A DNA stretch of 64,000 nucleotides from Hyphochytrium catenoides (GCA_900088475.1 FLMG01002348.1:40768-104767), one strand, 5' to 3'; shown: positions 38,401 to 60,000, counted from the first letter of the stretch. Made by a program: numbers and translations. The notes: generated from the letters alone by a model not told the origin.

Positions 38401-39517
38401 TGTACCCTTGTGCGATTGAGCCCGCGGTAGGAGCCAACCGCCTGCTTTACGCCTTCTTGGTTTCTGCTTATCATTCCGAGGAGGTAGAGGGCAGGTAAGG
38501 AAATGTTGGGATCTAGCTATTAGAGGAAGGCCTGTCCTCTGCAAGGCTGTTACCTATGATCTTGTGAAGTTAGAGATGCCCAGCATAAGAAAGTGTGAGA
38601 CTCCTTCGTGGCTAACTATTATGATGATAGGGAAAGAGTCGTTCTTAGACTACATCCGCAGATCGCGCCGTATCAGGTGAGCCCAAGAGTCCATTTGCTG
38701 CTTTGTAACTACGAGAATATCTTGTCTCCCTGTGTCACATAAGTTCGTACTTTTACGGTCATACACCATAAAGTTGCCTTCATACACTATAACAGTTGGC
38801 TTTTCAATTCGAGGAGCTTATGCCCTTCGCCCCTCTTCCTTACGCTTGCTTTGGTATACGTAGGGTTGTGGTTGCCTATCTCCTTGAGACACTTACGTGC
38901 GTTCTTCAATAGTTTCTTGTTTCCAAAAGTAGAATTCCGCGCCTAACGCCACCTGTCACAGCTGGCTGTTCTCCCCCTTCTCAAGAAGCCTGAGTTCGTT
39001 CAAGTCGCCACTGAGCTTTCCCACAAGCTTGTTAAGGGCAGACGTGTAGACTTTGACGTAACAGGGAGCATTGGTACCTATTTCAACCCATCTTCCCGCC
39101 ACCACTTCCTCAATGAGATGCTTTCATTTCCTCTTTGCCTCTTGCTCCGTCTGAATCTAAGCTATAGACTACTGGTTCGTACTGTTCCCACGTAATGGTC
39201 AGGGTCCCTTAGACCTCTTTTTCTTTTATACCAGACTTCATCATTCTCCCCGTCAATTCGGCATTTTTCTATCACAGCTCTCCTCGATCACCTCCTCACG
39301 CTTGTGTGCCATTCCTCACTATGTAGGTCGTCGGTACCGGCGTCAGGATGAGATTGGCACTCCTCTTTGTGTGACGGTAGACCATGAGACTCTGACCGAT
39401 GGGACGGTGACAGTCAGAGCGCGAGACTCTTTGAAGCAGATCCGGGTGCACAATGATGAGCTCGTAACAACTGATATTTACAGCTTGTTTGAAAGGTTAA
39501 ATACTATAGATACATGA
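35436..39517 (+). CDS. GARS: Glycyl-tRNA synthetase (class II, homodimeric alpha2 type), probably organellar/mitochondrial; multi-exon
   Basis: [92 protein letters not shown]. Basic/Ser-rich presequence ending RRSFSST. Confidence 0.95.
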
Positions 39518-39816
39518 GGACTGACGCTCGTCTTCAAAAGACCTGCCCATGGCCATGGCTGGTCTCCCTCACCACTAGAATTTGCAGCAAGAGGTGGAGA
39601 AGTAAAAGGACCTGGAAGCGGGAGGTTTTAGCTTTCAATGCCGCGCTGACAAGCTGTTTCCCTTTCTTTCTTGATCCCTACTCAGCCATATTCGCTGGTC
39701 TCTCTTTTGGTGTATCAGACGATAGGAAAGGCCATAAGGGGACCGGATAGGTCTAAGGTGACAATGGCATCAAGGCTAATGAAACGCACCAAACATCATA
39801 AAACCCATGGCGCCTT

Positions 39817-40447
39817 TCACTTCTTCGTCCCTTTAGCTCTACCGGGCTGCTGGGTTGCACCAGCCTTTGCGTTGTTTTGCGCTAGGGTGACCTTGAGATG
39901 CTCCTGGATGGCAGCGATAGGGTTGGTCTGAAAAGCTGGATGCTGCCGCACTAGCTCTAATCGCTTGGATTCTTGTACCACCATCGCTCTTCTTGATTTT
40001 GAAGTCTTCCCTAGCAAAAGGTTAGGCTGGGATCCCTTCTTCGGCCTATAGGATGGCCCCTCTGGACCTTCGTCTAGGGCTGAAAGGAGGCTATCCTTCA
40101 AAGCCCTGACCTCATCAAGCGGTTTCTTGACTTTAGCGCTATCTTGAGCAAGCACTGCCTTGGAGACCATGTCCATCTTCTTTAGAAAGGCTTCCCGCCT
40201 CCTTTGTCGTTTTCTTTGCCCTCTTGAGAGTCCTCCTTGAACGGGATCATCGCCTGCAAACTCGTTCTTCCATAGCATAACCTAAGAGTGCTGCATCTCA
40301 AGTACTTTAACTAACTGAACCTACCTCATCAGTCTTGAGTGCGATCTCATCTTCCTCATAATCATCATCTTCAAGGGGCAATCGGTTCTTAGAGTCTGGA
40401 GCTTTCGCGTGGACACGGTACTTCTTTCGTCGCACTTTGCCTCCCAT
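39817..40447 (-). CDS. SLX9: Ribosome biogenesis factor SLX9 / FAM207A homolog, 2 exons
   Basis: MGGKVRRKKYRVHAKAP N-terminus, basic LSRGQRKRQRRREAFLKK, and C-terminal HPAFQTNPIAAIQEHL motif. Confidence 0.85.
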
Positions 40448-41065
40448 TATGTTATCACCTCACTGTTCCGCCGACGAACTCTCTTTGACGAACCGTCAGT
40501 ATCTGTCTAGAGCCGATGGTCTACCTACCGCTGTGGCTGGTGAGACTTTCACGGCGATCTGTTGATTGCTGACATCATGCTGCACAGAGACTGTTGACGG
40601 AGCTTGCTGCCCAGTCATCCGGCAATCTGCAATGAGAAGCTTCATCCATCTGGTGATTATCATCAAGGGATTACCATATCGGTGTATGTTGGTAGATCCG
40701 GAATCATAATAGGTTTATTAGGTATAAAAGCCGCCTATGTAACGCATGAATTGCCCAGACCTGACACAATAAATGGATCTAATTAACGTCAGAATGGCCA
40801 CAACCATGGGGAAGCTCTTACTTCTGAGCTGTAGGTATGCCAGAAATTTATGCGAAAGACACCCACACCACAAACATGATCGCTCTGACAGGTAGAAATC
40901 CATTCCCGCGCTTTCCCTAGCTTTCCACTGTAGGCTTGGTCTGGGCTTCGCTTCTACCCCAGATCGTCAACACTTCGCCACTTCCAGAGCTTCATTGGCG
41001 TCACAGTCTCTCTCTCCTCTGTGAACAGAAGGCCCATTATCTTAGTATCTAGAATCCTTATAGCC

Positions 41066-42034
41066 ATGGCTGACGATAAGAACCCAGAGGAGACTCCACG
41101 TGAGAATGAGGAGGGTGGCGAGGAGGAGACTGCAAAGGAATCAGAGGAGGCTCAGGTCTACTTCGAGCCAGTAGTTCAGCTTGACGAAGTAGATGTCGTC
41201 AGTGGCGAAGAAGAGGAAGAAGTCATCTTCAAAATGTGAGTGAATCTGACGCTGTTGCTACCAGAAGCGCCAGAGGAAACACATTGCAAGCAGTTATGAG
41301 AGTGGCTTTGCGGCACTTGCTTCTGTTGTTTGTGTCTTAGTCTGTTTGCTTTGGAAGTTCGTAGGCCAGAGGTGCTGTCTCAATGCTGAATGTGCCTTGT
41401 CGTAGGCGATGCAAGGTATTTGTATTCGGGGAGACCCTGCTCGATGTTGGTACGGGCAAGAAGAACTGGAAGGAGCGTGGTACTGGAGATGTCAGGTTTC
41501 TTAAACACAAGGAACTCCAGAAGATTCGCGTCCTCATGCGACAGGAAAAAACATGGAAGATTTGCATCAACCATTTGGTAGACCACCGCGTAGAGCTTCA
41601 GCAGAACATTGGCAGCGACAGATCTTGGGTCTGGAGCGCGTATGACTTCTCGGAGGGCAAGGTCGAGAATCAGGTAGGAATGAATGACATAGTAGCGTAT
41701 TACCTTCGGCGAGTTCTGGCTTTGATGGTTGCTGTGCAGTAGCCTGCTTTACTGTCGCCTTCTTCATCTTTCTTTTGCTTCTCTTCCTTTGGGTGGTAAT
41801 TCATAGGTCTGATATCTCGTTTTCCATTAGGTCTTTGCCGTACGCTTTGCGAGCCCAGAAAATGCACAGAAGTTCAAGGAAGCCTACGATGCTGCCCGCG
41901 AGAACAACAGAAAACTGGAAGCCGGAGAGGATGCTGCTGACACATCAAAGGGAGACGAAGCCGCAGAGGCTCTCTCTGGTCTGAAGGTGGAGGGAAAGAA
42001 GGCTGAGAGTCCCAAGAAGGAAGCAGCGGAGTAG
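41066..42034 (+). CDS. RANBP1: Ran-binding protein 1 (RanBD), 3 exons
   Basis: [79 protein letters not shown]. Stop TAG at 42032-42034. Confidence 0.95.
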
Positions 42035-45247: not shown

Positions 45248-48200
45248 ATGGGCGCTCTCTTCTGCTGTCTGGACTGCTGTCGCTGGGGCAATGATTATCC
45301 CTCTCGAGCGGACAGATCAAGGGCCAGGAACAGCTCGGAGGATCTAAAGGAGGTTATCAAGGAGGGAGTCTTAACTAAGGTTGGGGACTATTACAGGTGA
45401 GAGGCAGCAGAGATCCTTGGCTCTAAGACCAAAGGCGATCCAGGGCTCTTTCCTTAGGCCGTCTCCCTTGGGCTCCTTCTACTCTTTCACGGCTCCTGGC
45501 CTGTGCCTTTGTTCTCTCTCAGTAACTTCTCTGGATGATCTGGCGGTCTGCAATGTCTCACCTTAGGCTCTGGTTGAATAGGAAACGTCACTTCGTGCTC
45601 GTCCCAGGGCAGCTGCGATATTATGAGTACAAAGTAGATCTGGGAATGCCGCTGCCTAAGCAGGAGATTCCTGGAGTCAAGCATGTCATCTCTTATCCGA
45701 AGGTAAGGCTAATTTGTGGCTACAAAGCCTTTATGCCTACTGTGCGCAGCAACTGTGGCCAGTAGGCCTTGTCCTTATCCTAGCGCCTTCTCCCTTTCTG
45801 TCAGTAAGCCCTGACACAGCTTCTGCCTCTCTCCTTGCGTCCGCACCAAAAGTCACCTGGCGCTATGGCTCTTACTTCAGTGACTCCTCCTATCTCCAGC
45901 ACCCCTCGAGGGGTGATGTTGCTCAGCCCGGACGAGCGTACGTCAGGTTAGGACAATGTTCCTTCTCTATTGGTGGCGCTCACTACGTTCGACTCTCATG
46001 TGCTCTCCTTCTCTCTCTCTTTCCTGGCTGATAGGAGCTCCTTTCGAGTGGTTTGTTCGACCCAGTTTGACGTCAAGCAATCTCTTTTACCTCAGCGGTA
46101 TCGCCCCTGATGGACAACGCGTTACGTGGACTCTGCAAGGTAGATAATTACTCTGCTCTCCTCTCGTACGGGCGGACAGATGGGGTTCGAAACAGCCACG
46201 CACAAATAGTGGATTGGTCCTGTCCTCTGAGGCTATCTTGCTTCATAACAAGATCAGAACGGAACCTCCGTTTGCAGCTGATGGCATGGCGCGGCAGCGC
46301 AGGTCGACAGCGGGAAGGGAGAGAAAGACTGAAAAGGGGTAAAAGGAGTGGGATGCAAAAAAGAGTCGATCTGCATAAGACCGCTCTGAGTAGGTTCCGA
46401 ACGAAGCAACGCCTTGACAGAGGGAGTTGAGGCAGTATAGGAGAGTTAGTTTCTGTAAGAATCAGGGAACAAGGGGACTAAAATACTCTCCATGGTTCAA
46501 TGGGCGTTGGGCTTCATCCCTGCAGCCGCAACAGCCAAGGACCGGGAGAGCTGGATCTTGAAGCTTCGAATTGCGGCACGTCCAGCTTGGGCGCGGAATC
46601 TTCCATACTGTCAGATCTGCAAGTCTAAGTTCACGTGTTTTCGAAGGCGGCATCACTGCAGGTATGCAATTTAGGTGTGCCGAGAGAGAGAAGAATGATG
46701 GAGAACAGAGAGATGGATAGGAGAATGGTAGATCTTAGTCTTCAACTTTGCAGGAACTGCGGTACTCTTATATGCCAAGATTGCATCTCATGCTATGAAA
46801 AGATCGTGGTGCTAGGCTTTGGATCTCCGGTAGGGCGGAGGGTCATGCGTCTCTCTTATAACTATTCTCCACTCGCACCGTGTCTCTTTCAAATCCTCTC
46901 CATGTCTTTTTCCATGAGCCGCTTCTTTCTTTCGGCTTGTCGACGCTAAGATGGTCTTAGCCTGTCATGGGGCCTGCTTGTCCTAAAATCATCTCGCTCG
47001 ACTGGTGCATGGGCCGGTTATCCTAGCTCTGACCTAGCTTCCAGTGTGTCATGCTTTGGTTATGGCAAATATCAAATGTCCTCACCTGTCTTCTTTCTTT
47101 ATTAAAAGGTACCCATATGCCGAGACTGTCGTCCTCGCAAGGAGGGGATAGAAGTCGGCTCCAGGGTCTCTGTCTATGGAAAGCATACCGGCTATGTTAT
47201 GTATGCAGGGGTACCGCCTCCTGGAACCCGAAGAAGGCAAGCAATCCTTATAGAGTGAAGAAGAAATCGGTGCATCGCACCTTTTGAGCCTTTCTTTTCT
47301 TATTGGAAGGCATTCAGCGTATCCGGCACTTCATACCAGACGAGAAGACACCTTGCTTCTTTTTGCCTCCTGCTCTACATCACTTACGCTCCGAGGAATG
47401 CTTTAGTCGTCGGGCCCTTCGCGGTCCTACTTAACTGTTGGTCTTCAGTCATGCTCCTCCGTTTACTTTCCTTCTCCTTCTCAGCTGAAGCCTTTTGACA
47501 GACTACTTTCCTTCTCCTTCTCAGCTAAAGCCTTTTGAGAGACTAACATTTTTTCTATCCCGTCTGTCAAAAGGGCTCAGGAAGTTTACGGCGTAAGGCT
47601 GGACAAGAGTCTAGGAGACAATGATGGCTCTCCCTTCTTTTCTTGTGCGTTGGGCCATGGCCTCTATGTCCCGAAGGTTCATGTCTCCCGCTTTTCAGAA
47701 CAGCTTGTCGCAGCTACTAGAATTAAGGTATGTGTCGCTTCGTTATAAAGGCTTGCCTTATCCTCATCTCACCCTTGTGGCTATTCCTGCATGACTTTAT
47801 AGTGTCAGGTCAGACGATATCTAGCAACGCGTCGTGTAAATGCTATCCGGGACAGGCGTGTTTGGAATGCTCTGGACACCCGTCGCGAGGACAAGGCGAT
47901 CGCTAGAGGTTAGAAGGACAGGAAACTTGTCTTACACTCCAGTACCGCTTCCTTTAGGAAGTCAGGGCTATATTTCACTTGTGGTTCTCTTAAACTCTCT
48001 TTCCTTGTATGGCCTTCATTTCCTTTTCGTCGTCGCTGCAGAAACAACAAACAGAGGATGGCTTCTCGTGGGAGAACCTTGCTTACATATTGCTACTCTT
48101 ACTCTCGGCTCAAACAATAGATTTACCGCATCATTCACACCAAGCGCTGGCCAGACAACCTTCTGGCTCAAACCTGGATTGGGCCGCGGTGAGTTACTCC

Positions 48201-51200
48201 TTCTTCAAGGCGCGTTAGGCATTGCAGTGTCAAGATTTAGCTTCATCCTTCGCGTCGATGGTAACTGGAGGCTTCTCCTCTATTATCCTAGTACGGGGCT
48301 AGTATGTTCTACAGCGCTATTCGTGATGTCAAAGTTCTTCCTTCTGCACCTTATGGATCGCTGTCTCGTTCCGCATGCATACTTCTTTCCGAACCTAAGC
48401 GGGAGGCGGACCGGCAACTGCAATACCTCCGTGAGCCCATAGATTTCTCAGATTACCACGGGTCGCCAATTGAATTTCCTTTAACTGTGGAGTCCGTCTA
48501 CGCCATGATAGAACAGTTTCGAAGGGGAATCTGGCTGCATCGGTAAGAGGGTGTCTTGTGCCTCGAATGTCTCAGGGTCCTCGTATAGGAATCTGAAGGA
48601 AAGGTTTCTTCCTAAGAAGAGAAAGAGGTGCTAAAAATTCTGCTCTAATTGCGACCCACTCCCTTCTCCTCCTTGCGCTGTCAGGAACTACGTTTATAGG
48701 ATCTGCTGTTTGGCCAAAGACATCTTTGACCGAGAACCTACACTTCTGCATCTGGAGATACCTCCTGACTCGAAGCTGACGATTTTGGGCGATATTCATG
48801 GGCAACTCGGCGACCTTCTCACTATCTTCACCCTTAACGGTAAATGCACTCCGTTATACTCTGCCTTTTGCCGGGAGTAGCAGTTCACGTAGGATGAACT
48901 CTTTCTTTAATCTATTGCTATCATCTGTCAGTTCAGGGCCTGCTAGGGCTGCTTATGCCTTCTCCGTGTGCATCATTCCGCTCCCCTTCTCTTTGCACTT
49001 TGGCCACGTGGGCGTCAATCCTTCTTCTCGTCTCTTCTGATGCCGCACTTATTTGCTCTTCCCAGTAGCTGTCAAACAAGTCTAATGAAGCTTCTTCAAT
49101 CTTCTTGGCTAGTGGTCCCAGAGGTCTGACTCACGACAACATTTGTTAGGGTTGCCCTCTCCTTCGAATCCATATTTATTCAATGGGGATTACGTAGACC
49201 GTGGTTTTCACGGCGTTGAGGTCCTAATGGTGATCTTCGCTTTCAAGATACTCTATCCTGCGCACGTCTGGGTTCATAGGGGTAACCACGAGTGCCGATG
49301 TAAGACATGATACATCTCCCATTACTTTTTACGCCTATCTCAAGCAGTCGGCTTCTCCGTGCTATGTTATGTTTCGGCTGCCAACGGCATCTGTGGTGCT
49401 GACTCACTAGGTTTTCAGCGCTGAGGCAGACTGTGTCCTCCCTAGTCTCCCTTCCTGTTCTTTGAGGATACAATACTCTCTCACTTTCTCGTTGTCATAT
49501 CTGCCCCCCGCTGAGCCCTTCTCCTACCTTCAGTCCCTTATCAATCTTCTTCTGTCGTGACATAATGATCTTTCCCTCGTATCAGCGGTCAACTTTATGA
49601 TGGGTTTTGCCGAGGAGCTGGTACGAAAGTACGGCGAGAGACACTATACTGTAAGGGGATTAGAAGGAGGAGAGCTGCGTAGTCCTTCTCCGACCCCTTC
49701 GGCGTCTGCTCCTCATGACCTCTTCGAGCTATTTGAGAGTGTGTTTGACAGGCTGCCACTGTGCTCTCTGGTCAAGGGAAAGGTCCTCGTGGTGAGCTAA
49801 CCTTTCCTCTGATTTGGATTCTCTTGTGCATATGCTGCCGGCATCGTTTGCCACATTCATGCAGAGATTTATCTTACTGCCTTCCTATTCGAACCATGTC
49901 ATCGCCAGTTCTTGCTCTAGCGGTAGCTGATCTATCCGATATGTTTGCCCACTAACTGTTGATCTTCCCGTCTGGGTGATGCGATGCGTCGTCATACCAC
50001 TAGTTTCGCTGTTTGTTTCCCCCGGCGATCGTTCCCTGTCCTCTTTACATGACCAGCTTTCCAATTGCTTCTTTGTTTTTGCTAGTGCCACGGCGGACTG
50101 TTCTCGAAGGATGGCGTGACTTTGAGCCATATCTCTTCCATTAGACGGAAAAGAGAGGTCCCCCACAGTCCTAACCGCTTTGAAGAGGCCATCTTTGAGG
50201 ATCTGCTGTGGTCTGATCCGAAGATTCTGCAAGGGTACGGAAGCCACTCGTTCTACTAGCCTTATAAAGTAGCATTGGTATCTACTCTTCCCTCATCCTT
50301 CTTCCAAGTTGCTCTGAAGGACATCGATAGAGGTTGGTCGAGTAGTCCTTATATCAGTCCAGTCATCTGTGCCTCCGTCCGTTCTGTCCTGCCGTCTCCT
50401 GTTAGGACGCGCCCTTCCACGCGAGGTGCCGGAGTAGAGTTTGGAGAGGACGTCACGGCTGATTTCCTTAAGCGGAACGGGCTGGAGTTGATTATCCGCT
50501 CTCACGAATGTGTAGATAATGGCTGGGAAGTGATCCATGGAGGCAGGGTCATCACTCTCTTTTCCGCTTCCCTGTACTGCGGCGTCCAAGTAAGTCGGAT
50601 GAATGCGAGGGGAGAGGATTTAGACTCTTGAAAGAGAAGGCTGGGCAGCCTGTTACTTAGCACTTCGATATAGATCCTTTGGCATCTCTATGCTGCCATG
50701 ACAGGTTCTTTTTGTCTTTCAAACAATTACTTCGAAGTTCCATCTGCCTCCTCAAGTTCATGTCTATACAAAAACGACTCGGAGGGCGTTGAACCTTGGT
50801 CGTTCTGCAATCTAGGCCTTCTTCTGCTTGCGGATGGTGGCACTCATACCTCAATCTTACTTTTGCTTGATGGTCAGAACAACAAGGGCGCATACCTGAT
50901 TTTGAACAGTGACCTTCAGCCAGATGCCCACACATTTATCGCTCAGCCCTTACAGCATACGGATGTCAAAGGAGAGACCGCGAGACAAAAAGAGCAAAGA
51001 ATTCAGGGAGAGATAAAGTCAATGCTGAAAGCCCAGCTGTCAGGCGGGATTTACTCTATATACAGGTTAGCCCTCACATTTCTTGAGCCCACTCTTTTGA
51101 AGGTTCTTTGTGAGGATGTCTCGGCGGCGATCTCTCATAGTTGCATGGCTAATCCACCGATTCTACCTCTGCATCTGACCTTCTACCTTTCTTTCGGTTA

Positions 51201-53714
51201 GGCAGCTGAGGCTTGCAGATAAGGAGACATCTGGACTGCTGCCTTGCAACCGTTTCTACGTATCACTCAGTCAGGCCCTTAAACTCGATATCCCTTACAA
51301 GATCTATCTGCGCGACACCGTCAAGGAGGCTGGTGGACTTGTCGATTATAGGAGGTAAGGGTGGTGAAAACGTGAGATGGCCGCAAAAAGCGAAAGACCT
51401 CGACAGTAGATACGGTGAGGTCAATGACGAGCTGGAGGCCTGAATGACGTTCGGGGTTATGGCTACTATGGGTTGGCTCATTATATCTCTCTTCCTTGCC
51501 CGTTCTCTACCTAGATTCTTAGCTACACTAAAGGAAAGTGCCCCAGGGACTCCTCAAGAGCTGGAAAAGGTCCTTGGGCCATCTGCTGTCAAAGATATCG
51601 TTCAGGTGGGAATAGGAAATTGACCGCCTTGTGTCCGTCAACCTTGTTGTGTCCGCCGTCAGCGATGTGATTGGACCCTTTGTCTTTCTCGTTTTTCTTT
51701 GCTAAGTAGTCAGCCTTCTTTGACGTATCTACTGCAACGCGTGGTACCTTCCTTACCTGCATCTCTCCTGTCTCTCTCTCTCCGCTTTATGTTCAGAGTG
51801 TGAAGTCGGCAACAAAAATAGGAGAACGGATCCAAAACTTCGAGGCTAACCTTGCAGAGCGCGAAGGCTGCTTGACAGAGCGACAGGTTGCCTAGAGAAT
51901 TTGTCCTCTACTCATAGCAACATGGAAGCATTAGCACCGCTATTGACTTTGCAAGAGCATTGCACAAAGCAGATCTTGACGGTCTCCCTTTCTTGTCCTA
52001 GATGCTATCTACGTTTGAGGAAGTTGAGAGAAGATTACGCGTTGGAGTGAGCGCTCCGGAAGGAGAAGAGGAGAAAAAGAAAGAGGAAGAAGAGGAAAAG
52101 AAGGCTGTGGAAGGAGAAGGATTTGAGCTAGTAGGGCATGAGACAGGAGGGTTGAGCCCTTCGGCCTCATCTCAGGAAGAGGATGTCGTGTTGGTGACTA
52201 TGGATCCGGCCATGAGGAAGGCAAGCTCTCTATCTTTCTCTTCTCAAGCTCTTCACTATTCCCAAATCTCTTTTAATTTTCCTTAATAGCCAGCCCTCGT
52301 TAGTCCATCGAGCCACGCTTCTGTGAACAGAAGATGCTGTAGCTTACGTTCAGCTGTCTCGTCTCTTGTTCAAAACTTCGTCTTTTAACGGAACAGCTCT
52401 GCCTTCTAGACCCTGCTTAAACCTAGCGCTTACGGGCTCAACGTTATGGCATTGCTTCTTTGCAGCGTCTGCTAGCCTTGGTGGAACACCTTCGGAACAA
52501 GTACGGGAATCTTCACCTGGCCTACGAAATTACCGTCCGCCTGGGAGGACCAGATCGTCTGCGTATTGAGCTACGAGCACTTTCTCCTCCTCTCTCATCT
52601 ACGGAGGAAGACAGACTTCTGCAGCACTTCTTCGGTCCCAGGTCAAAACACTCATTGAACCTTTCTGTTCAAAAGTCTGACTCTTATTCTCCATCTTCCC
52701 CATTCGCCGTCCCACCCCCTCCGTAGTGCGTCTTATGCCCACATATATGGTGATCCTAGCATATGGTGTTCCTACAATTTACTCTCCTCCGAATGTCAAA
52801 AACCTCATGGCAGATTCCTCCTAGCTTCCCGGGACGTTCATTGTTCCTGGCTCTTGCGAGAAAGCTACGTGCTGTCTGATGTATGCCCTCTCTCATCTTG
52901 AATAATCAACTTGCAGACTGAAGTCGCCCCCAAGACGACACGCATTCTTCCAGTTGCTTCAGGAAGGAGAAAAGTCTCTCAACCTTGTTGCAGAGCTGAT
53001 TGAGCTGGTGAGTATGAAGAAAGACTTGGGAGGCATAGCCTCTTTTCCAGGGCTCCATCGGAATTTTTTTTCCGTTGCTCTTCCAATACTTCTCTAATAC
53101 CTTTCGATGGTTCTTTTGCCACGTTTAACAAATAGCCTTCTGTCTCGAATGACCAGGTACCCGCGTTGCCAGCTCTCTCGTTGGTCTTTGCCGCCAAGCC
53201 GAGTCATATTGAATCCATCTTTGAGCGATTTGATGTAGAACAAAGCGGAAGGTCTGCCCTAAGCTCCGCCTGGGGCTATCTATGTTCCATGTTACTATCT
53301 CTCAGCCTTACCCGCAGCGATTGACCGTGACTGCCAGAAGTCTGTTCTGTCGGTACCGCTCCTGTTGACTAACGCTGTTTCAGTTGAGGCCTAACTCTCT
53401 TTCCATTTGTCGGGCAGCATCTCTCTGGAACAGTACTTATGTGCCATGATGATTATCGGGCAGCATCTGGATGAGCCTTTGGAGGCACAAGAGGTCGAGG
53501 TAGGGTGAAAGAGGGGAAGCAAAGCTTTCGATGAGAGACTGAAGGGAGCAACATCAGAGGCAGGCGGATGTCACCAATAAAGACTTTCTTTATGCTCTAA
53601 GACCATTATCCGTACATGCAGGCAATCTTGTTCTTACTGGACAATCTGGAGGAGGACCGGATCAATTACTACGAGCTCATTGTCAAGGTGATGCGGGTTA
53701 CAGAGGCAAGGTGA
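45248..53714 (+). CDS. PPEF/PP5-like PPP Ser/Thr phosphatase with N-terminal acylation motif, PH, FYVE, CAP-Gly and IQ domains and C-terminal EF-hand(s); >20 exons
   Basis: [11 protein letters not shown]; PH (KEGVLTK...RHFVL...LRYYE...[13 protein letters not shown]); FYVE (CQIC...[11 protein letters not shown]...ICQDC...ICRDC); CAP-Gly ([15 protein letters not shown]...GHGLYVP); IQ-like [20 protein letters not shown] motifs GDIHG (48788-48802), GDYVDRG, RGNHE, HGGL, WSDP, RSHE, FSASLY. EF-hand [17 protein letters not shown]. Stop TGA at 53712-53714. Confidence 0.88.
47464..47543. repeat. Intronic 40-bp tandem duplication
   Basis: tactttccttctccttctcagct(g/a)aagccttttga(c/g)agac x2. Confidence 0.9.
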
Positions 53715-54075
53715 ACACTCTCTCCTCGGCATTCACTGTTCCTTCACTTCGAAGAATGGAGATGGAGGACTTCCAGAATTCAGAAGGACATTCTGGATAA
53801 GATGTCTCTTTATTGACTAGTTCGGTTGCTGCACGTGGGTGTCAAAAGCTTTCTGTCGCTTACACTCTTTATTTCTCAGCGGAAAATTGTTCGTCTTCCT
53901 CTCTGCTTTCCTCTTCCCGTCCCCTGTCTGTTTGTGCGGTTGCCTGTATCAACCCGCCTGCCTTGCCGCTTGCCGCATTAGTTAGGATTGCAGCTAAAAG
54001 CCTTATATCTACTTCGAAAACCTCAGACAAGAACCCTGTCCTTAGCTTACTGATAGTTCCGGAGGGAAGAGTAAG

Positions 54076-57000
54076 TTAGAGAGTCTCCAAGGACTTGGTG
54101 GGGCCTAGACCGTCAGTGATGGCACTCTCCGCGGAGGCATTGAGGGTCGACTCTTTTCTCTGCTGGGCATGAGTGTTCGCCGACACCTGGCTCTTGAATA
54201 GCTTCCTGAGCTTTCGGGCCGAGAAAGAGTTCTGCACCATGGCGCTCTCTGCCTCAGTCGTATCCTACATATTGAGGAGAAAGGAAAAGATAGTTGCGGT
54301 GAGAGTATGAAGAGAAGGAGAGTGAGCATAAATACATTGAAAGTGGGAGGTAAAGAATAGAAAGAGAAGGGAAGAGAAGGGGCTCCGCCAGAAAGCGACG
54401 GGGATAGACGAGATGTCTGTTCCCGAAGAAGACAAAGTGGATGTGGCGAAACACAGAGCCTAAGGGTTGCCAGCAAAGGAAGGTGGGTGAACCACCTTCC
54501 TCCATGCCTAAAAGCAGTCATCTTGTTTACGACTCGGTAAACTAGGTCGCCCTTACCTGGTCATTGGAGAAGGCAAAACCTGTTCTCCGGAACTTGGAGC
54601 CCACTGCGAGAGGAGAGGCCAAGCTAATGAACTTCTTCTTTTTCTTCTTTTTCTTTGCCTTATCTGTTACCCCAGCAGGTACAAGAGAGACACAAGAGGG
54701 AGAGAAGAACTAAGTAGTTAGCGCGTGCTCCGTCGTGTTTAGCCCAGCTGGGAAGTCCTTACCATCTCCTGCCCCAGGAGCCATGGGAGAGTCCACGCTG
54801 CCAACATTCTTATCCACAACGATTGCGACCTTACCATCGGAAACTGCCGCAAGCGATGACGAGATAGGAGAGACCGCTGCAAGAGAGGAAGAGGCAGTCG
54901 AAGGCGCCTCTGCTGTCAGATAAGCGCCAAGATCTTCTTCAGGCAGGCCCAGAATCTCCGCCTCTCTTGCGATATCGTTGAAGTGGGGCCTGATCGAAAG
55001 AATCAAGGAAAATGAAGGAGGAGTGAGAACTAATCAGCGTTGAAGAAGCAAACGGACCAACACCAACGAAGGAGAGAAGGGAGGGATTATAGACCTTATC
55101 ATCAATTTCCAGCCTCTCCTAGCAAAATCAACTCCAATGGTCAAGAAGAGGACAAGCCCAAGGCAGCACCAGAAGATTTTGTCCTCGAGTAGTTCCTAAG
55201 AAAGTAGCAGTCGATCAATCAACGAAGGGCCAGCGACGAAGGACTAAAGCAGCGATGCCTGCAGTATCAGAATGAAAGACAGGTCGAAAGGTTGCAGCTT
55301 TGAAGTCATAAAGCTTGAGCAGTCGTGAACATCGCGGCCTTTGCAGAGGGAAACAGAACAAGGGAAAAAGACTGACTAGATCTTTTCTCTTTCTCTCTAG
55401 CTTGAAATGTTTCTCTCTCTCACACATACACGCTATCGGACATACCCTGTTCCTCTTTCGCCACTGCTGTGACTTACCTCGTAGATTCCTAACCAGGATG
55501 CCCCTGCTATCATCTCGTTTCTGTTAAAGTAAACGGCGGAAAAGAAGAAAGAGAAGATAGAGCCCCACAGCGCTATGTGATTGAACCAGTTCCAGGACTG
55601 TTGGCACAAGGCAAGCTTGAGGTTCGAGACCAGGACAACACAGGTCAAGGCCACAGCCCCAAGGACCCAGAGGTGGCTGAGAGGAAAGCGTAGCGAGAGG
55701 AGATAAACGCATTAGAGTTGCAGCCTTTGGTATGGAAACGGTGAGATGCTCGTATAAGCGACGATGAAGGGAAGACAAAGGACGGCTTGATGTCTTCCTA
55801 GGTCATTGATTTATCAATGAAGACCGACAAACACCTCCGACTGAGTGATCGGTGCTAACAAGTGACAGGACATGGGAAGATAGAAAGTGACGTAGGTTAG
55901 ACACTTACGTATCTGACCCATCTGGTCCATGCCTCGCAAAGCTGAGCACAACCACGACGGTGATGATGAGCGACTGGTAGATACCAGCACTCAGCCACAT
56001 CCAGAACTTTGCAGCATTCAGAAGTCTGAAGCAGGGAGCGACGTTAGCTCGTTCGAAGGTAAGGAGGAAGAGATGGGACATACTGGATGAGGAAGATCAT
56101 TCTTAGGAGCACTGCCTGGCCTTACCTTTTCTGGGGTCCTGCCTTGTATAGCTGAGGATGCCTCAAGGAAAAGGCTGCGGACACATCTTGTTCCAGAACT
56201 CCATGAAGAAAGATTGGTAGAGCTACACCAGACAGCAACAAAAGAGAGAGAAAGAGAGAGAGAGAGAGAGACGAACGTGGGGAGAGCACACGAGACTTAG
56301 CAAGCGCAATAGCTGGAAAGCCCTACTCCAATAGTTTGATACAGCTCCGTTGGACGCTCAGACGAGAGATAAGACAGGGCTACATATCAAGGAGAAGAAG
56401 CTTAAAATGCAGGGCAAGTTTTAGAGGGTTTAGCGCGGGGCTTTGAAACGCATCGCTTCCCTCGAGCAACCATGCATGTGCCTCGATCTCTTTCTTTTTC
56501 TCTCTCTGTACCCACCTGTGTAAAGCACGTTAAAGGCCTGCAGACCCATTTCAAGGTAGAACTTCTGGCCCGAGAAGCCTTGGAACCAGGAGTACCAGTA
56601 CTGAGTCATTTCAAGCATGATGCACTGCTCACGAGAAATGATAGACCACGAGTGATATTGGGAGGACAAAAGGGCCACAGGTGGTTAGAGAACCTTGCTG
56701 ACGTCGGTTTGTGGCCACGAAGCAAGCAGAAGACAGTTTGAGGCGGAAGGTTGCCTAAGATGTAGGGAAAGTAGAGAAAAGAGAAGGAAGAGCTGGCAGG
56801 TCATCTTGCGCTGTGCCTGTATCCCTCGCTATGCCTCCTTTCAGATCATCCACTGGCTAACTTTGTATTCCCTGACAGGTCCCTTGATTCCGTTCTCTCT
56901 CTTTCCGTTCACTCTCTCCATGTTCGTTCCGCTCGATCGTAGTTTGATCGTACCTTATAGAACATGTAGGGGACCAGTCTGCTCATTCTTAGGTAGTTCC

Positions 57001-60000
57001 ATCTTCCATGGACTAGCAAGAGCTTCGCTAAGAATTTGAACTGAGCGATAGCAAAGTCTGAGGCCATGACCGCCTGCATCCCCTCCATCCCACTCATGCC
57101 AATGCCGACATGCGCCTTCTGGATCATACCCACATCGTTGGCTCCATCTCCAATTGCCAGAGTGGTGATGCCTGTGTGACAAAGAGTGAGAAAGCGACAA
57201 GGGACGAAAGAGCCAAGACTGGAGGACTTCGAGAGGCAAGAGTAAAGGGCAAGACAACAAACAGAAGAGGACAAAACACGATTGAAGACAGGGAGACAGA
57301 GATGATGGAGATGTCACAGAATACGGGAATGACAGAGAGGGACAGAGAGAGAGAGAGAGAGAGAGCGATATCTCGTATGTCGCTCGTATAAGATCCACTA
57401 TTGAGGGTTGCTCCCTCCTTCTTCGCCCTGACCCTAACATTTTTCTCTCTCTGTTTTAGTTTCATGCTCTGTGATACCTCTGGAGTTGCTCCGGACTAAA
57501 GTCACAAGCTGTCCTTTCTGAGAAGGAGAGACTCTGCAAGCTACCACTGCCGCGCACTCTCGTGCCAGATGGAATAGCGAGAGAGCGTGGGAGGGAGCGA
57601 GAAGATGGTCCAGTGCCTCACTGTCCACCACCAATGCAAGGGGCTCCTCTGATTTATTCTGCCGGGGACAGACCGTAATAAAGGCAAGAGATTTGAAGCA
57701 TCAGGGACGTTAGCAGTAGTCTAGAAGACAGAATGACAGAGAACAGGGAGGAATGGCCCGCAGAAGGCCGAAAGCAGAGAGATAGAGAAAAGAGAGGAAT
57801 GCAAAGAAAAAGCACAGAGACCAAGAGAGCGGGAGAATATGAAAGGTAAATAAGGAGGGAAAAGGTAATATGGGAGGGAAGGAAAGGGAAGATAAAGGGA
57901 ACAGGGATAAAAGATGGCAAAGCTATATCGTCCCACTGTTAAACCCTAAGTTATATAGCGAGATAAGGGAACAAGCGGGCGGGAGATATCGAGAGAGATA
58001 AAGATATGGACAGAGAGCGTGAGACGGACCTTGTCGGAGGTGAGGTACTGGACCTCTTCCTTAAGCTTAGCAAGCAGAACGTCCACTGACTGACACTAAG
58101 AGCGAGCGTCAGAGAGACGTCAGAAATCTCTCGCTTTCTCACTAGTCTTCTCTAGCCTCTACGGTCACAGGTACTCTGTAGTCTCTAACACCCCACCGAC
58201 TTTCGCTCTTTATCTCTCCATCTCTCCTTCTCTCCTGCCCTCTTTCTCTATCTGTCCTATTGCTTTCAGCACTTGTCCTCGCTCTGGCCATCCTCCTACC
58301 TGCTCCATCGTCAGGTAGATCCTCCTCATCTCATCGGTGAACAATTGGCAAGCAAAAGCAATGTTCACCGCTGTCTCCTGCTTGTCTCCGGTGAGCATCC
58401 AGATCTTGATGCCACCTTGGCTCAGCAAATGAATGGTTTTAGGGACATCGTCCTGCAGGCGATCTTCAATGGCTGTCGCTCCCAAAAGGATCAGGTTCTG
58501 TGCAGTGTGTGAGCGTGAAAGAGCAAGAAGGAGTGTTCAGAGATTAAAGCATTAGCCGGAGAGGAAACGAGAGAGAGTCGAAGGAGGACAGCAGGAAAAT
58601 TTAGATAGAAGAGGAGGAACACAAGGACGTCTAAAGTGGCCTAGCTGATATAAAAAAGAAGGATGAGACTGGCAGAGCAGAATCATCCTCTTTCCTGTCT
58701 TTGTCTTCCTACTTAGATCTTCTCTGCTGATGCTCACCTGCTCTATCTTGTCCATCACCCTATCAATCTCATTATCCTCGAGCCTCTGCCTCTTCTCCAG
58801 CTCTTCCAGACTTCCAAGAGCTTCGTGATACTTCAAGCTCCACGCCTGATACTCCTCTTCCCGCAGCGTCTTATAGGCGATGGCCAGGGTACGCAGGCCA
58901 TCGTCAGCAAACTCTTCCATATGTTGCAGCGTGCTATCGATGATGTCTGAGGCGGCATCTAGGGGAAGAATAGCCAGAAGAGTAATGAGAATTCGCCGGG
59001 AAAAGGTAGTGAGCCAGCAGGAGAGATACATACAGTTCTGGAGAGCGATAGAGTATATAAGAGAGAAAAGAGAGAGAGAGAGAGATAGGAGTGGAGATGT
59101 CAGTCCTCTCACCTTGGCCCAGGCGAGGAACAATCACCGCATCTGCGCCCTTGCAATATAGAAGAATCGCCCCGGTCTCATCTCTGACGATAATGCTCAT
59201 TCTCTTTCTCGTGCTGTTGAACTCCAAGACGTCCAACACCTCCACCTTCTTCTCCTCTCCTCTAATCTTGAACACGAGGGAGCCGGGAGAGCGATCCACA
59301 AACTCAAAGCCAAAGTACTTCGCGCCGGTGACAAGTGCCTGCTCATCTGAGGACACCAGATATGAGAGACACAGGGCTTAACTTCTAGAATCAGAAACGA
59401 GACACATAACCGAGAGAGGATTCAGGACAGCGAAAGGAGGGTCATGAAAGAGAAAGAGAGCAGACGAAGAGGGAAAGAGGAAGAGAGCAGACGAGAAGGT
59501 TGATGGCGGCCGACGAGAGAATGAAAAGGGGTGTATTTGCCGTGCTTTGCACCTGCTAGAAGTACCGTCTTTCAGTAGTATGAGGCCACGGCTTCATCTC
59601 TCTCTCTCCCGCCCTCTTCTCTTTCCCTCATTCTCTCTCGCCTACCTGGTGAGGAAGCGGAGTAGATGACGCCGCTGACCCCTTCGATGTGCTCTGGAAT
59701 GACTGTGTGGCACACGGCCAGATGTGTGAAGAACATTCGGATCTTCTCAAGTTGGTCTGACTTGGCGCCAGCAGTCTTTCCTTCGAGGATGTCAAAGATC
59801 TGGAAAGGGGTAGCGGAACCAGGAGGAGGGACGAAAGAGTGGACGATGAATAAGCTAAGGCCATTAGTAAAGGGCAAAAACATAGAATAGTAGAGAGACA
59901 AAGGAAGGAAGGAAGAGAGAGAGAGAGACAAGGTGGACATATACAAAGGAGGAAAAGAGAAGGACAAGGTCTGGAAGTGAGCATATATATGTATAGAGCA

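What the first reader, a model, noticed from the sequence alone, without database searches (positions are those of the whole stretch)
45248..53714. Membrane- and microtubule-targeted Ca2+/calmodulin phosphatase: acyl-PH-FYVE-CAP-Gly-IQ-PPP-EF-hand architecture
Seen: exons splice in frame from [11 protein letters not shown] (Gly2 plus clustered Cys) through PH, FYVE, CAP-Gly and IQ-like segments into an intact PPP catalytic domain and an EF-hand. Known: PPEF/rdgC phosphatases normally have only IQ + PPP + EF-hands, with N-acylation in kinetoplastids; FYVE binds PI3P; CAP-Gly binds tubulin/EB C-termini. Inference: a Ca2+-regulated phosphatase that links phosphoinositide membranes (endosome or flagellar membrane) to microtubule ends. 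I do not know this combination as a described architecture.
Basis: partly seen in the sequence, partly recalled or inferred. Interest (0 to 1): 0.8.

Follow-up and report, generated by a model that had tools for sequence, protein, structure and literature searches.

The report
FYVE and CAP-Gly tagged PPEF phosphatase
One gene of about 23 exons in an oomycete-related protist encodes a PPEF-type protein phosphatase with membrane-lipid and microtubule-type binding modules at its front end; a similar layout sits unstudied in all oomycetes, so it is a new variant of a known enzyme family, not a one-off.

Summary
ATG 45248 to TGA 53714 (+ strand) can be read as one gene of about 23 exons. All introns are GT-AG, and the model is stop-free at 1044 codons. 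Single exons hit FYVE, CAP-Gly and Metallophos in Pfam. Profiles of related proteins align collinearly across the whole locus, including the linker between the CAP-Gly/IQ part and the catalytic domain.

The closest relatives are stramenopile PPEF phosphatases of two kinds:
- PH-like + FYVE + PPP (+EF): about 40 oomycete clusters, one uninterrupted 704-aa environmental ORF, and a second copy in this genome.
- CAP-Gly + IQ + PPP + EF.

This gene is the only one I saw with both a FYVE and a recognisable CAP-Gly (GDNDG). FYVE-type relatives carry a degenerate beta-barrel at that position.

- All catalytic motifs are intact.
- The C-terminal EF region has no canonical Ca2+ loop, so direct Ca2+ sensing is doubtful.
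- PH and IQ are supported only weakly.
- No RNA run was listed, so splicing is inferred.
- CAP-Gly-PPEF is already in the literature. I found no text on FYVE-PPEF.

The scan had already noted a CAP-Gly-PPEF paralogue on other DNA of this genome.

Verdict: new variant of a known kind, moderate interest.

The parts
45248..45396 (+). Exon 1: start codon, N-terminal [11 protein letters not shown] (Gly2 plus four Cys), first strand of the PH-like domain
   Evidence: In-frame stop 18 nt upstream. Donor CAG|GTGAGA. Family profile positions 11-43. Cys clusters recur near the N-termini of relatives.
45567..46139 (+). Exons 2-3 (45567-45702, 46049-46139): body of the PH-like domain
   Evidence: Collinear weak hits to the FYVE-type family profile, positions 47-73 and 129-145. 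tblastn to P0008. The exon 3 acceptor is one of two frame-compatible choices.
46526..46661 (+). Exon 4: C-terminal helix of the PH-like domain (with the conserved Trp) and first half of FYVE, including RRRHHC
   Evidence: Pfam FYVE E 1.8e-5. Family profile iE 1.9e-13. tblastn to P0008, P0084 and P0044.
46754..46829 (+). Exon 5: middle of FYVE (NCG...CQDC)
   Evidence: Pfam FYVE E 2.4e-3. Profile iE 2.7e-5. The junction codon restores HHC-R-NCG.
47109..47210 (+). Exon 6: last Cys pair of FYVE (PICRDC) and first strands of CAP-Gly. An alternative donor lies at 47254.
   Evidence: FYVE-type profile iE 2.2e-6 and CAP-type profile positions 4-27, iE 8.5e-3. Junction options.
47581..47727 (+). Exon 7: CAP-Gly core with GDNDG and FFSC...GHGLYV, then the start of the IQ-like motif. 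An alternative acceptor lies at 47574.
   Evidence: Pfam CAP_GLY E 1.5e-4, profile 24-62/65. CAP-type profile iE 1.5e-8. Alignments to P0002 and P0032.
47803..47908 (+). Exon 8: IQ-like basic helix and the WNxLD segment that precedes the catalytic domain in all relatives
   Evidence: CAP-type profile iE 7.3e-6 and FYVE-type profile positions 300-332. tblastn to P0023, 47% identity. Donor GAG|GTTAGA; an in-frame stop follows if the exon is not spliced.
48335..48542 (+). Exon 9: linker and the PP5-like helical region just before the catalytic core. An alternative acceptor lies at 48443.
   Evidence: Family profiles iE 4.8e-8 and 4.8e-6. The same region is PF08321 in relatives. Frame-compatible acceptors.
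48685..51065 (+). Exons 10-15 (48685-48839, 49150-49299, 49586-49791, 50086-50234, 50406-50589, 50878-51065): PPP catalytic domain with GDIHG, GDYVDRG, GNHE, HGG, RGAG and RSHE
   Evidence: Pfam Metallophos on two exons. Profiles iE 1e-11 to 1e-31. phmmer found 3938 relatives. Motifs found in the frame check.
51202..51354 (+). Exon 16: first EF-like unit ([12 protein letters not shown], position 12 is R)
   Evidence: tblastn to the same region of several PPEFs, E about 0.002 in a 3.3-kb target. Collinear weak profile hits. No Pfam hit.
51799..53007 (+). Tentative exons 17-20 (51799-51886, 52020-52193, 52466-52641, 52917-53007), including an acidic/Lys-rich stretch. An optional extra exon lies at 51534-51605.
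   Evidence: Only my own splice-site and codon-usage dynamic programme supports these, plus stop-free joining. They have no homology support.
53157..53714 (+). Exons 21-23 (53157-53251, 53418-53499, 53622-53714): terminal EF-like pair with loops [12 protein letters not shown] and [12 protein letters not shown], then TGA
   Evidence: Frame-compatible GT-AG junctions rebuild the loops. Weak collinear matches to the EF-hands of relatives. There is no canonical loop.

Best explanation
This is a single, intact, intron-rich gene (45248-53714, + strand, about 1044 aa). It encodes an active PPEF-family Ser/Thr phosphatase of the stramenopile 'FYVE-PPEF' lineage.

Shown:
- A complete PPP catalytic core.
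- A FYVE finger with all eight Cys and the R(R/K)HHCR motif.
- A CAP-Gly domain with GDNDG.
- Collinear homology of the whole N-terminal module and linker to proteins that are single polypeptides elsewhere.
- A C-terminal EF-like region without any canonical Ca2+ loop.

Inferred:
- The enzyme is held on PI3P-bearing endomembranes by coincidence of N-terminal acylation (Gly2 and the Cys cluster), the PH-like domain and the FYVE finger.
- The CAP-Gly may add contact with tubulin or EB tails.
- As in RDGC, an IQ-like helix in front of the catalytic domain probably gates the active site together with calmodulin and the EF-like tail. Because the gene's own EF loops are degenerate, as in Leishmania PPEF, any Ca2+ control would come through calmodulin.
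- In evolution it looks like a CAP-Gly-PPEF that gained PH-FYVE. This copy kept the CAP-Gly that the oomycete copies let decay.
For: - Exon-wise Pfam hits for FYVE, CAP_GLY and Metallophos.
- Frame-compatible GT-AG junctions at every step and stop-free joining.
- Profiles of FYVE-type and CAP-type relatives hit the exons in strict order, with abutting profile coordinates at the junctions.
- P0008, one uninterrupted 704-aa ORF on a 32-kb environmental scaffold, has PH + FYVE + PPP.
- Globisporangium K3WX33 and about 40 oomycete clusters have FYVE + PPP + EF.
- CAP-Gly + PPP + EF occurs in Pythium, Thraustochytrium (transcript) and Phaeothamnion.
- A second PH + FYVE ORF abuts a PPP + EF ORF in this same genome.
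- The family N-terminal profile matches solved FYVE domains at E 7.8e-17, and the model of P0008 matches them by fold.
- Cys clusters recur at the N-termini of relatives.
- Mechanism by analogy: RDGC cryo-EM (PMC11962071) and the dual-acylated Leishmania PPEF with non-binding EF-hands (PMC1885993).
Against: - No transcript data: no RNA run was listed, so no reads could be laid.
- If exon 8 is not spliced it ends in a stop at 47911, and an ATG at 48304 could start a separate PPP gene.
- PH rests on hits below the cut-off in relatives and on a low-confidence part of the model.
- The FYVE lacks exact WxxD and RVC motifs.
- The CAP-Gly has Lys replaced by Asp in GKNDG and a 4-residue deletion.
- The matching barrel of P0008 resembles Tudor/KOW folds rather than CAP-Gly.
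- The catalytic exons are equally distant from FYVE-type and CAP-type relatives, so orthology rests on the N-terminal module alone.
- The exons between 51355 and 53156 are unverified.
Confidence: 0.75

Rival explanations
1. There are two adjacent genes. A small PH-FYVE-CAP-Gly-IQ adaptor ends at the TAG at 47911-47913. A separate PPP + EF-like phosphatase starts at the ATG at 48304.
For: The open frame of exon 8 runs into a stop right after the proposed donor. ORF 48304-48546 begins with ATG in the frame of exon 9. No RNA evidence joins them.
Against: The IQ-like/WNxLD segment of exon 8 is the part that lies directly upstream of the catalytic domain, in the same polypeptide, in all CAP-type and FYVE-type relatives. 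Those include one uninterrupted ORF and MMETSP transcripts. A consensus-like donor (GAG|GTTAGA) and in-frame acceptors exist. The gap would be only about 390 nt. The paralogue in this genome has the same order on one strand.
Confidence: 0.08
2. It is one gene, but the accessory modules are relics. The CAP-Gly no longer binds EEY/F tails and the FYVE no longer binds PI3P. The protein would then be simply an acylated PPEF with a structural N-terminal extension.
For: GKNDG is GDNDG, with a 4-residue deletion next to it. WxxD is WARN and RVC is PIC (sequence). In oomycete and environmental relatives the CAP-Gly position is a degenerate barrel. In the paralogue the R(R/K)HHCR motif itself is degenerate. 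The EF loops here are degenerate.
Against: R(R/K)HHCR and all eight Zn-binding Cys are intact, and the motif is more canonical than in the oomycete copies. CAP-type stramenopile PPEFs such as P0002 share the same GDNDG. The aromatic/Cys/Gly pattern after the motif is kept, so there is no sign of free decay.
Confidence: 0.15
3. It is a gene-prediction mirage: unrelated domain-like fragments in non-coding DNA, or a decayed pseudogene.
For: Single exons are short, and several Pfam hits fall below the family cut-offs.
Against: Fifteen consecutive exons hit two independent family profiles in order, with E down to 1e-29. None has a frameshift or stop, and all catalytic motifs are present.
Confidence: 0.02

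Closest known systems
Oomycete FYVE-PPEF proteins. Examples: Globisporangium ultimum K3WX33, Phytophthora nicotianae F444_22272, and the Plasmopara halstedii 'putative serine/threonine-protein phosphatase with EF-hands'. Also environmental P0008 and P0044.
   Same: The order is the same: Cys-rich N-terminus, PH-like, FYVE, small barrel, IQ-like/WNxLE, PP5-like linker, PPP, EF region. The PH-FYVE junction is strongly alike.
   Different: Those proteins show no Pfam CAP_GLY at the barrel position. Their R(R/K)HHCR is usually RPHHCR, and the long forms keep canonical EF-hands. The window gene has a recognisable CAP-Gly, RRHHCR and degenerate EF loops. They exist only as automatic database entries; I found no study of them.
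CAP-Gly-PPEF of stramenopiles (Pythium oligandrum TMW57085.1, Thraustochytrium MMETSP0198 transcript, Phaeothamnion CAM9314521.1) and the CAP-Gly-bearing PPEF/PP7 of apicomplexans (Andreeva and Kutuzov 2009, as cited in PMC8785970)
   Same: CAP-Gly, then the IQ-like motif, then PPP, then EF. One of them, P0002, has the same GDNDG variant. The catalytic exons are as similar to these as to the FYVE-type.
   Different: They have no PH or FYVE and keep canonical EF-hands. This genome has its own copy of this type on another contig.
Drosophila RDGC and human PPEF1/2
   Same: The PPP core has PPEF-type inserts, an IQ-type helix in front and an EF-like/EF-hand tandem behind. This is the likely basis of autoinhibition (PMC11962071).
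   Different: The animal enzymes have no PH, FYVE or CAP-Gly, and their EF-hands bind Ca2+. Here no loop is canonical.
Kinetoplastid PPEF (LmPPEF, TbPPEF)
   Same: N-myristoylation plus palmitoylation motif, endomembrane location, and degenerate EF-hands that do not bind Ca2+ (PMC1885993).
   Different: They have no PH, FYVE or CAP-Gly. The similarity in acylation is by motif only and was not tested here.
Phafin/PLEKHF-type PH-FYVE modules (recalled from my own knowledge, not tested here)
   Same: A PH domain directly followed by a FYVE finger acts as one endosomal targeting unit.
   Different: Those are small adaptors without an enzyme domain. No sequence comparison was made here.

Membership tests
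PPEF/RdgC subfamily of PPP phosphatases | PPP catalytic motifs GDxHG, GDxVDRG, GNHE, HGG, RG and the conserved His | tested here: met
   GDIHG, GDYVDRG, GNHE, HGG, RGAG and RSHE are all present in order. Pfam Metallophos hits two exons.
PPEF/RdgC subfamily of PPP phosphatases | Closest relatives are PPEFs, not PP1, PP2A, PP2B or PP5 | tested here: met
   The top phmmer and profile hits carry Metallophos + EF-hands, and several are named 'phosphatase with EF-hands'. No tree was built.
PPEF/RdgC subfamily of PPP phosphatases | IQ-type calmodulin-binding motif N-terminal to the catalytic domain | tested here: inconclusive
   An IQ-like basic helix (I-K-x3-R-R-x4-R) spans the exon 7/8 junction. 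There is no exon-wise Pfam IQ hit. The segment aligns with the IQ region of relatives.
PPEF/RdgC subfamily of PPP phosphatases | C-terminal EF-hands able to bind Ca2+ | tested here: not met
   EF-like units are present and collinear with the EF-hands of relatives. However, no canonical 12-residue loop exists in any + frame, and Pfam finds none. The same is known for Leishmania PPEF.
FYVE zinc finger | Eight Zn-binding Cys and the R(R/K)HHCR motif | tested here: met
   The Cys pairs are CQIC, C-R-NC, CQDC and CRDC, with RRHHCR. Pfam FYVE hits both halves. The family profile matches solved FYVE domains at 7.8e-17.
FYVE zinc finger | WxxD and RVC motifs that complete the PI3P pocket | tested here: not met
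   The sequence has WARN and PIC instead. Oomycete relatives have WVQN and RIC.
CAP-Gly domain | Match to the domain profile over both halves | tested here: met
   Pfam CAP_GLY scores E 1.5e-4 on the exon holding profile positions 24-62. The profile of CAP-type relatives hits both exons, iE 8.5e-3 and 1.5e-8. Each exon alone scores below Pfam's cut-off.
CAP-Gly domain | GKNDG motif and the groove that binds EEY/F tails | tested here: inconclusive
   The motif is GDNDG (Lys to Asp, as in P0002), followed by a 4-residue deletion; FFSC...GHGLYV is kept. Binding cannot be tested here.
PH domain | Seven-strand sandwich capped by a C-terminal helix with a conserved Trp | tested here: inconclusive
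   Exons 1-4 gave no exon-wise Pfam PH hit. Relatives score 22.6 and 21.3 bits against a cut-off of 25.1. The model of P0008 shows the strand-and-helix pattern, but at pLDDT 40-60 in part. There are weak hits to kindlin and AKT PH domains. The Trp is present (ESWILKL).
N-myristoylated and palmitoylated proteins | Gly2 with a permissive residue four positions later, and nearby Cys | not testable with these tools
   [11 protein letters not shown] fits the pattern by eye. Cys clusters recur in relatives. No predictor or assay was available.
Stramenopile FYVE-PPEF lineage | Collinear homology of the PH-like, FYVE, barrel and IQ-like parts in front of a PPEF core | tested here: met
   The family profile hits all the exons in order, supported by tblastn alignments. 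Catalytic exons alone do not separate this lineage from CAP-type PPEFs.

The most novel reading that the evidence does not exclude
The enzyme is a working three-way coincidence detector. Acyl anchor, PH-like domain and FYVE place it on PI3P endosomes or vacuoles. A still-functional CAP-Gly docks those membranes to tyrosinated tubulin or EB tails. Calmodulin on the IQ-like helix switches the phosphatase on. This would be a membrane-microtubule contact-site phosphatase not described in any organism. It would also preserve the ancestral state of a lineage present in all oomycete pathogens.
Probability: 0.2. Interest if true: 0.6.

Novelty: new variant of a known kind. Interest (0 to 1): 0.4.

Why it matters
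PPEF phosphatases are usually described as IQ + PPP + EF enzymes of sensory cells, and their substrates and targeting are poorly known.

This gene and its relatives show a stramenopile-wide branch in which the enzyme is fused to a PI3P-type membrane reader. This copy also keeps a microtubule-tail reader. PI3P biology matters in oomycete plant pathogens, and every oomycete checked carries the related FYVE-PPEF, yet I found no paper that mentions it.

The window gene also links two database architectures, CAP-Gly-PPEF and FYVE-PPEF. It gives a simple account of the unexplained barrel after the FYVE in the oomycete proteins. It is a useful lead for cell biologists of oomycetes and their kin, but it is not a new kind of system.

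Tried and rejected
- **RNA support.** The look-up of sequencing runs listed no RNA run, so read laying could not be used. None was listed; that does not mean none exists.
- **Exon-wise Pfam for PH, IQ and EF-hand.** All blank, because introns cut these motifs.
- **First gene-finder run.** My dynamic programme produced implausible micro-exons of 8-18 nt. I kept only the runs with longer minimum exon lengths, and only as tentative.
- **Fragment alignment.** My display used a wrong frame for exon 4 and overlapped fragments. I did not use it for the window row.
- **Word-based search with P0008's N-terminus.** It found only P0008 itself and Saprolegnia.
- **Foldseek on the P0008 model.** It confirmed FYVE. 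It matched the post-FYVE barrel to Tudor/KOW folds, not CAP-Gly, and did not recover PH.
- **Catalytic-exon similarity.** It did not separate FYVE-type from CAP-type relatives.
- **Literature.** Searches for FYVE or CAP-Gly together with PPEF, oomycetes or stramenopiles found no description of FYVE-PPEF. The 2009 review that describes CAP-Gly-PPEF is not held, so I cite it only through PMC8785970.
- **Joined protein.** The exons were joined only inside scripts, to count stops and locate motifs.

Full report
**What is in the sequence**

The window is intron-rich eukaryotic DNA of about 49% G+C. On the + strand an ATG at 45248 opens with [11 protein letters not shown], and an in-frame TGA lies 18 nt upstream. 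Open stretches downstream carry recognisable pieces of domains.

I scanned exons by reference. The Pfam results were:
- FYVE, split over two exons: 46459-46671 (E 1.8e-5, profile 7-28) and 46629-46946 (E 2.4e-3, profile 27-42).
- CAP_GLY at 47539-47745 (E 1.5e-4, profile 24-62 of 65).
- Metallophos at 49113-49307 and 50260-50628.

PH, IQ and EF-hand gave nothing exon by exon. Introns cut these motifs.

**Exon model**

For every pair of neighbouring coding pieces I listed the GT-AG introns that keep the frame. Each junction has at least one, mostly with good consensus (for example CAG|GTGAGA, AAG|GTAAGG, CAA|GTAAGT).

Fifteen exons from 45248 to 51065 join without a stop. The last three exons (53157-53251, 53418-53499, 53622-53714) also join in frame, rebuild an EF-like pair and end at TGA 53712-53714.

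Between 51355 and 53156 I have only a small home-made splice and codon model. With it, a 23-exon model of 3135 nt (1044 codons plus stop) is stop-free, and all 22 introns are GT-AG.

Three junctions have alternatives that also keep the frame:
- the exon 3 acceptor;
- exon 6/7, either 47210/47581 or 47254/47574;
- the exon 9 acceptor, 48335 or 48443.

**Relatives**

A phmmer search with one catalytic exon found 3938 relatives. The best are 50-65% identical, and none is from this genome. Pfam scans of the long hits showed two N-terminally extended kinds of PPEF:
- PH + FYVE + PPP (P0008), FYVE + PPP + EF (P0084, which is Globisporangium ultimum K3WX33) and FYVE + PPP (P0044).
- CAP-Gly + PP5-like linker + PPP + EF (P0002, P0005, P0016, P0023, P0024, P0032, P0065).

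The named ones are stramenopiles: Pythium, Globisporangium, Thraustotheca, Phaeothamnion and a Thraustochytrium transcript.

P0008 is one uninterrupted 704-aa ORF on a 32-kb environmental scaffold. The fusion of PH-FYVE to the phosphatase is therefore real in at least one organism without any splicing assumption.

Two wider searches showed FYVE + Metallophos (+ EF-hands) in about 40 oomycete protein clusters: Phytophthora, Pythium, Plasmopara, Peronospora, Hyaloperonospora, Saprolegnia and Aphanomyces. Some are named 'phosphatase with EF-hands'. No protein there has both FYVE and CAP_GLY.

**One gene or two**

Profiles built from the FYVE-type and the CAP-type relatives hit the window's exons in strict order, and the profile coordinates abut at the junctions. 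For the FYVE-type profile the run is 146-191, 190-217, 216-251, then 300-332, 375-408, 408-462 and so on.

In every relative these two are neighbours in one polypeptide.

A two-gene reading is formally possible. Unspliced, exon 8 runs into a stop at 47911, and an ATG at 48304 is in the frame of exon 9. I give that reading about 8%.

The genome itself adds support. It holds 61.0 Mb in 4759 records, and the window is C2034:40768-104767. It has two paralogues:
- A CAP-Gly-IQ-PPP-EF gene on C4119 with canonical EF-hands.
- On C2125, a PH + FYVE ORF directly followed on the same strand by a PPP + EF ORF.

**State of the modules**

*Catalytic core.* It is intact: GDIHG, GDYVDRG, GNHE, HGG, RGAG and RSHE.

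*FYVE.* All eight Cys and RRHHCR are present. WxxD is WARN and RVC is PIC. The family profile matches solved FYVE domains (Vps27, 7.8e-17). An AlphaFold model of P0008 residues 1-250 matches Hrs, Vps27 and EEA1 FYVE by fold.

*CAP-Gly.* Both halves match. The motif is GDNDG, as in P0002, and four residues are missing before FFSC. In P0008 and the oomycete proteins the same position holds a small barrel without the motif. It is confident in the model but resembles Tudor/KOW folds. I infer a decayed CAP-Gly there and a preserved one here.

*PH.* Support is weak. Relatives score just under Pfam's cut-off. The model shows the strand and helix pattern at low confidence. There are weak profile hits to kindlin and AKT PH domains. 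The conserved Trp of the closing helix is present.

*N-terminus.* Cys clusters recur within the N-terminal ~30 residues of several relatives (within the first 10 in P0008, P0084 and P0180), and a few begin MG. Lipid anchoring is therefore plausible but untested.

*EF region.* No canonical loop exists in any + frame from 50900 to 54000. The best candidates are [24 protein letters not shown] and [12 protein letters not shown].

**How it probably works**

*Shown.* It is an intact PPEF-type catalytic domain behind an FYVE and a CAP-Gly, and it has degenerate EF loops.

*Inferred.*
- Acylation, the PH-like domain and the FYVE together place the enzyme on PI3P-bearing endomembranes.
- The CAP-Gly may add a tubulin or EB contact.
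[quoted passage not shown] The IQ-like helix here probably gates activity in the same way. Ca2+ would be read by calmodulin rather than by the protein's own loops.
- The nearest functional precedent for the lipid anchor and the silent EF-hands is Leishmania PPEF. It is dual acylated, sits in the endocytic system, and its EF-hands do not bind Ca2+ (PMC1885993).

**What is known**

- PPEFs are reported from oomycetes (PMC8249667).
- A CAP-Gly in front of the calmodulin motif of PPEF/PP7 is credited to Andreeva and Kutuzov 2009 in PMC8785970. That review itself is not held.
- I found no text on a FYVE- or PH-bearing PPEF. Two surveys of oomycete FYVE proteins do not mention phosphatases in their text.
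- The combination is therefore common in databases and unstudied. Among the proteins I saw, the version with a recognisable CAP-Gly is unique to this gene.
- The catalytic exons are equally close to both kinds of relative, so membership of the FYVE-type lineage rests on the N-terminal module.

**Organism and neighbours**

The record count and size fit the Hyphochytrium catenoides assembly: 4758 scaffolds plus a mitochondrial record (PMC5795050). The affinity to oomycetes fits too. This is an inference, not a test.

Neighbours by Pfam:
- SLX9 on the minus strand, 39817-40278.
- A class II tRNA-synthetase anticodon-binding domain at 39302-39517.
- RanBP1 at 41383-41742.
- A P4-type phospholipid flippase on the minus strand from about 56900 to beyond 59350.

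The gene therefore has a gap of about 3 kb on its 5' side, and a converging gene lies about 3 kb downstream (nearest Pfam-supported piece at 56909).

**Limits**

- No RNA run was listed.
- It was assembled only inside scripts, to count stops and find motifs.

**Verdict**

This is a new variant of a known kind, with interest 0.4.

Noticed in passing
L009 (G000:C2125:11000-19000), minus strand, 6180-4480 and 4474-2306: A second PH + FYVE PPEF gene in the same genome. A PH + FYVE ORF is followed on the same strand by a Metallophos + canonical EF-hand ORF in another frame, which implies one intron. Its R(R/K)HHCR is degenerate (LRRPHCK), and it has no N-terminal Cys cluster.
   Followed up: partly
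L008 (G000:C4119:12500-22000), minus strand, about 6145-1500: A multi-exon CAP-Gly-IQ-PPP-EF paralogue with canonical EF-hands and a non-canonical CAP-Gly motif (GTCNG).
   Followed up: partly
window 52020-52193: A tentative exon encodes an acidic/Lys-rich low-complexity stretch (Glu/Lys run) between the EF-like units. It has no homology support.
   Followed up: no
window 56909-59356, minus strand (extends further): A multi-exon P4-type phospholipid-translocating ATPase (PhoLip_ATPase_C, Cation_ATPase) converges on the phosphatase gene.
   Followed up: partly
window 39302-41742: Three housekeeping neighbours: the anticodon-binding domain of a class II tRNA synthetase (39302-39517, +), SLX9 (39817-40278, -) and RanBP1 (41383-41742, +).
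   Followed up: partly
whole genome G000: 61,026,713 bases in 4759 records match the published Hyphochytrium catenoides assembly (4758 scaffolds plus a mitochondrion). Identity was not tested by sequence.
   Followed up: partly
P0084, P0180, P0191, P0196, P0197, P0200 (oomycete FYVE-PPEFs): Cys-Cys clusters lie near the N-terminus in many family members, and K3WX33 also ends in KCKCC. This hints at palmitoylation as a family trait.
   Followed up: no
P0001 (Thraustotheca clavata OQS02982.1, 1301 aa): This protein carries two complete PPEF units (PPP + EF twice) in one gene model. It is either a tandem duplication or two genes fused by the annotation.
   Followed up: no
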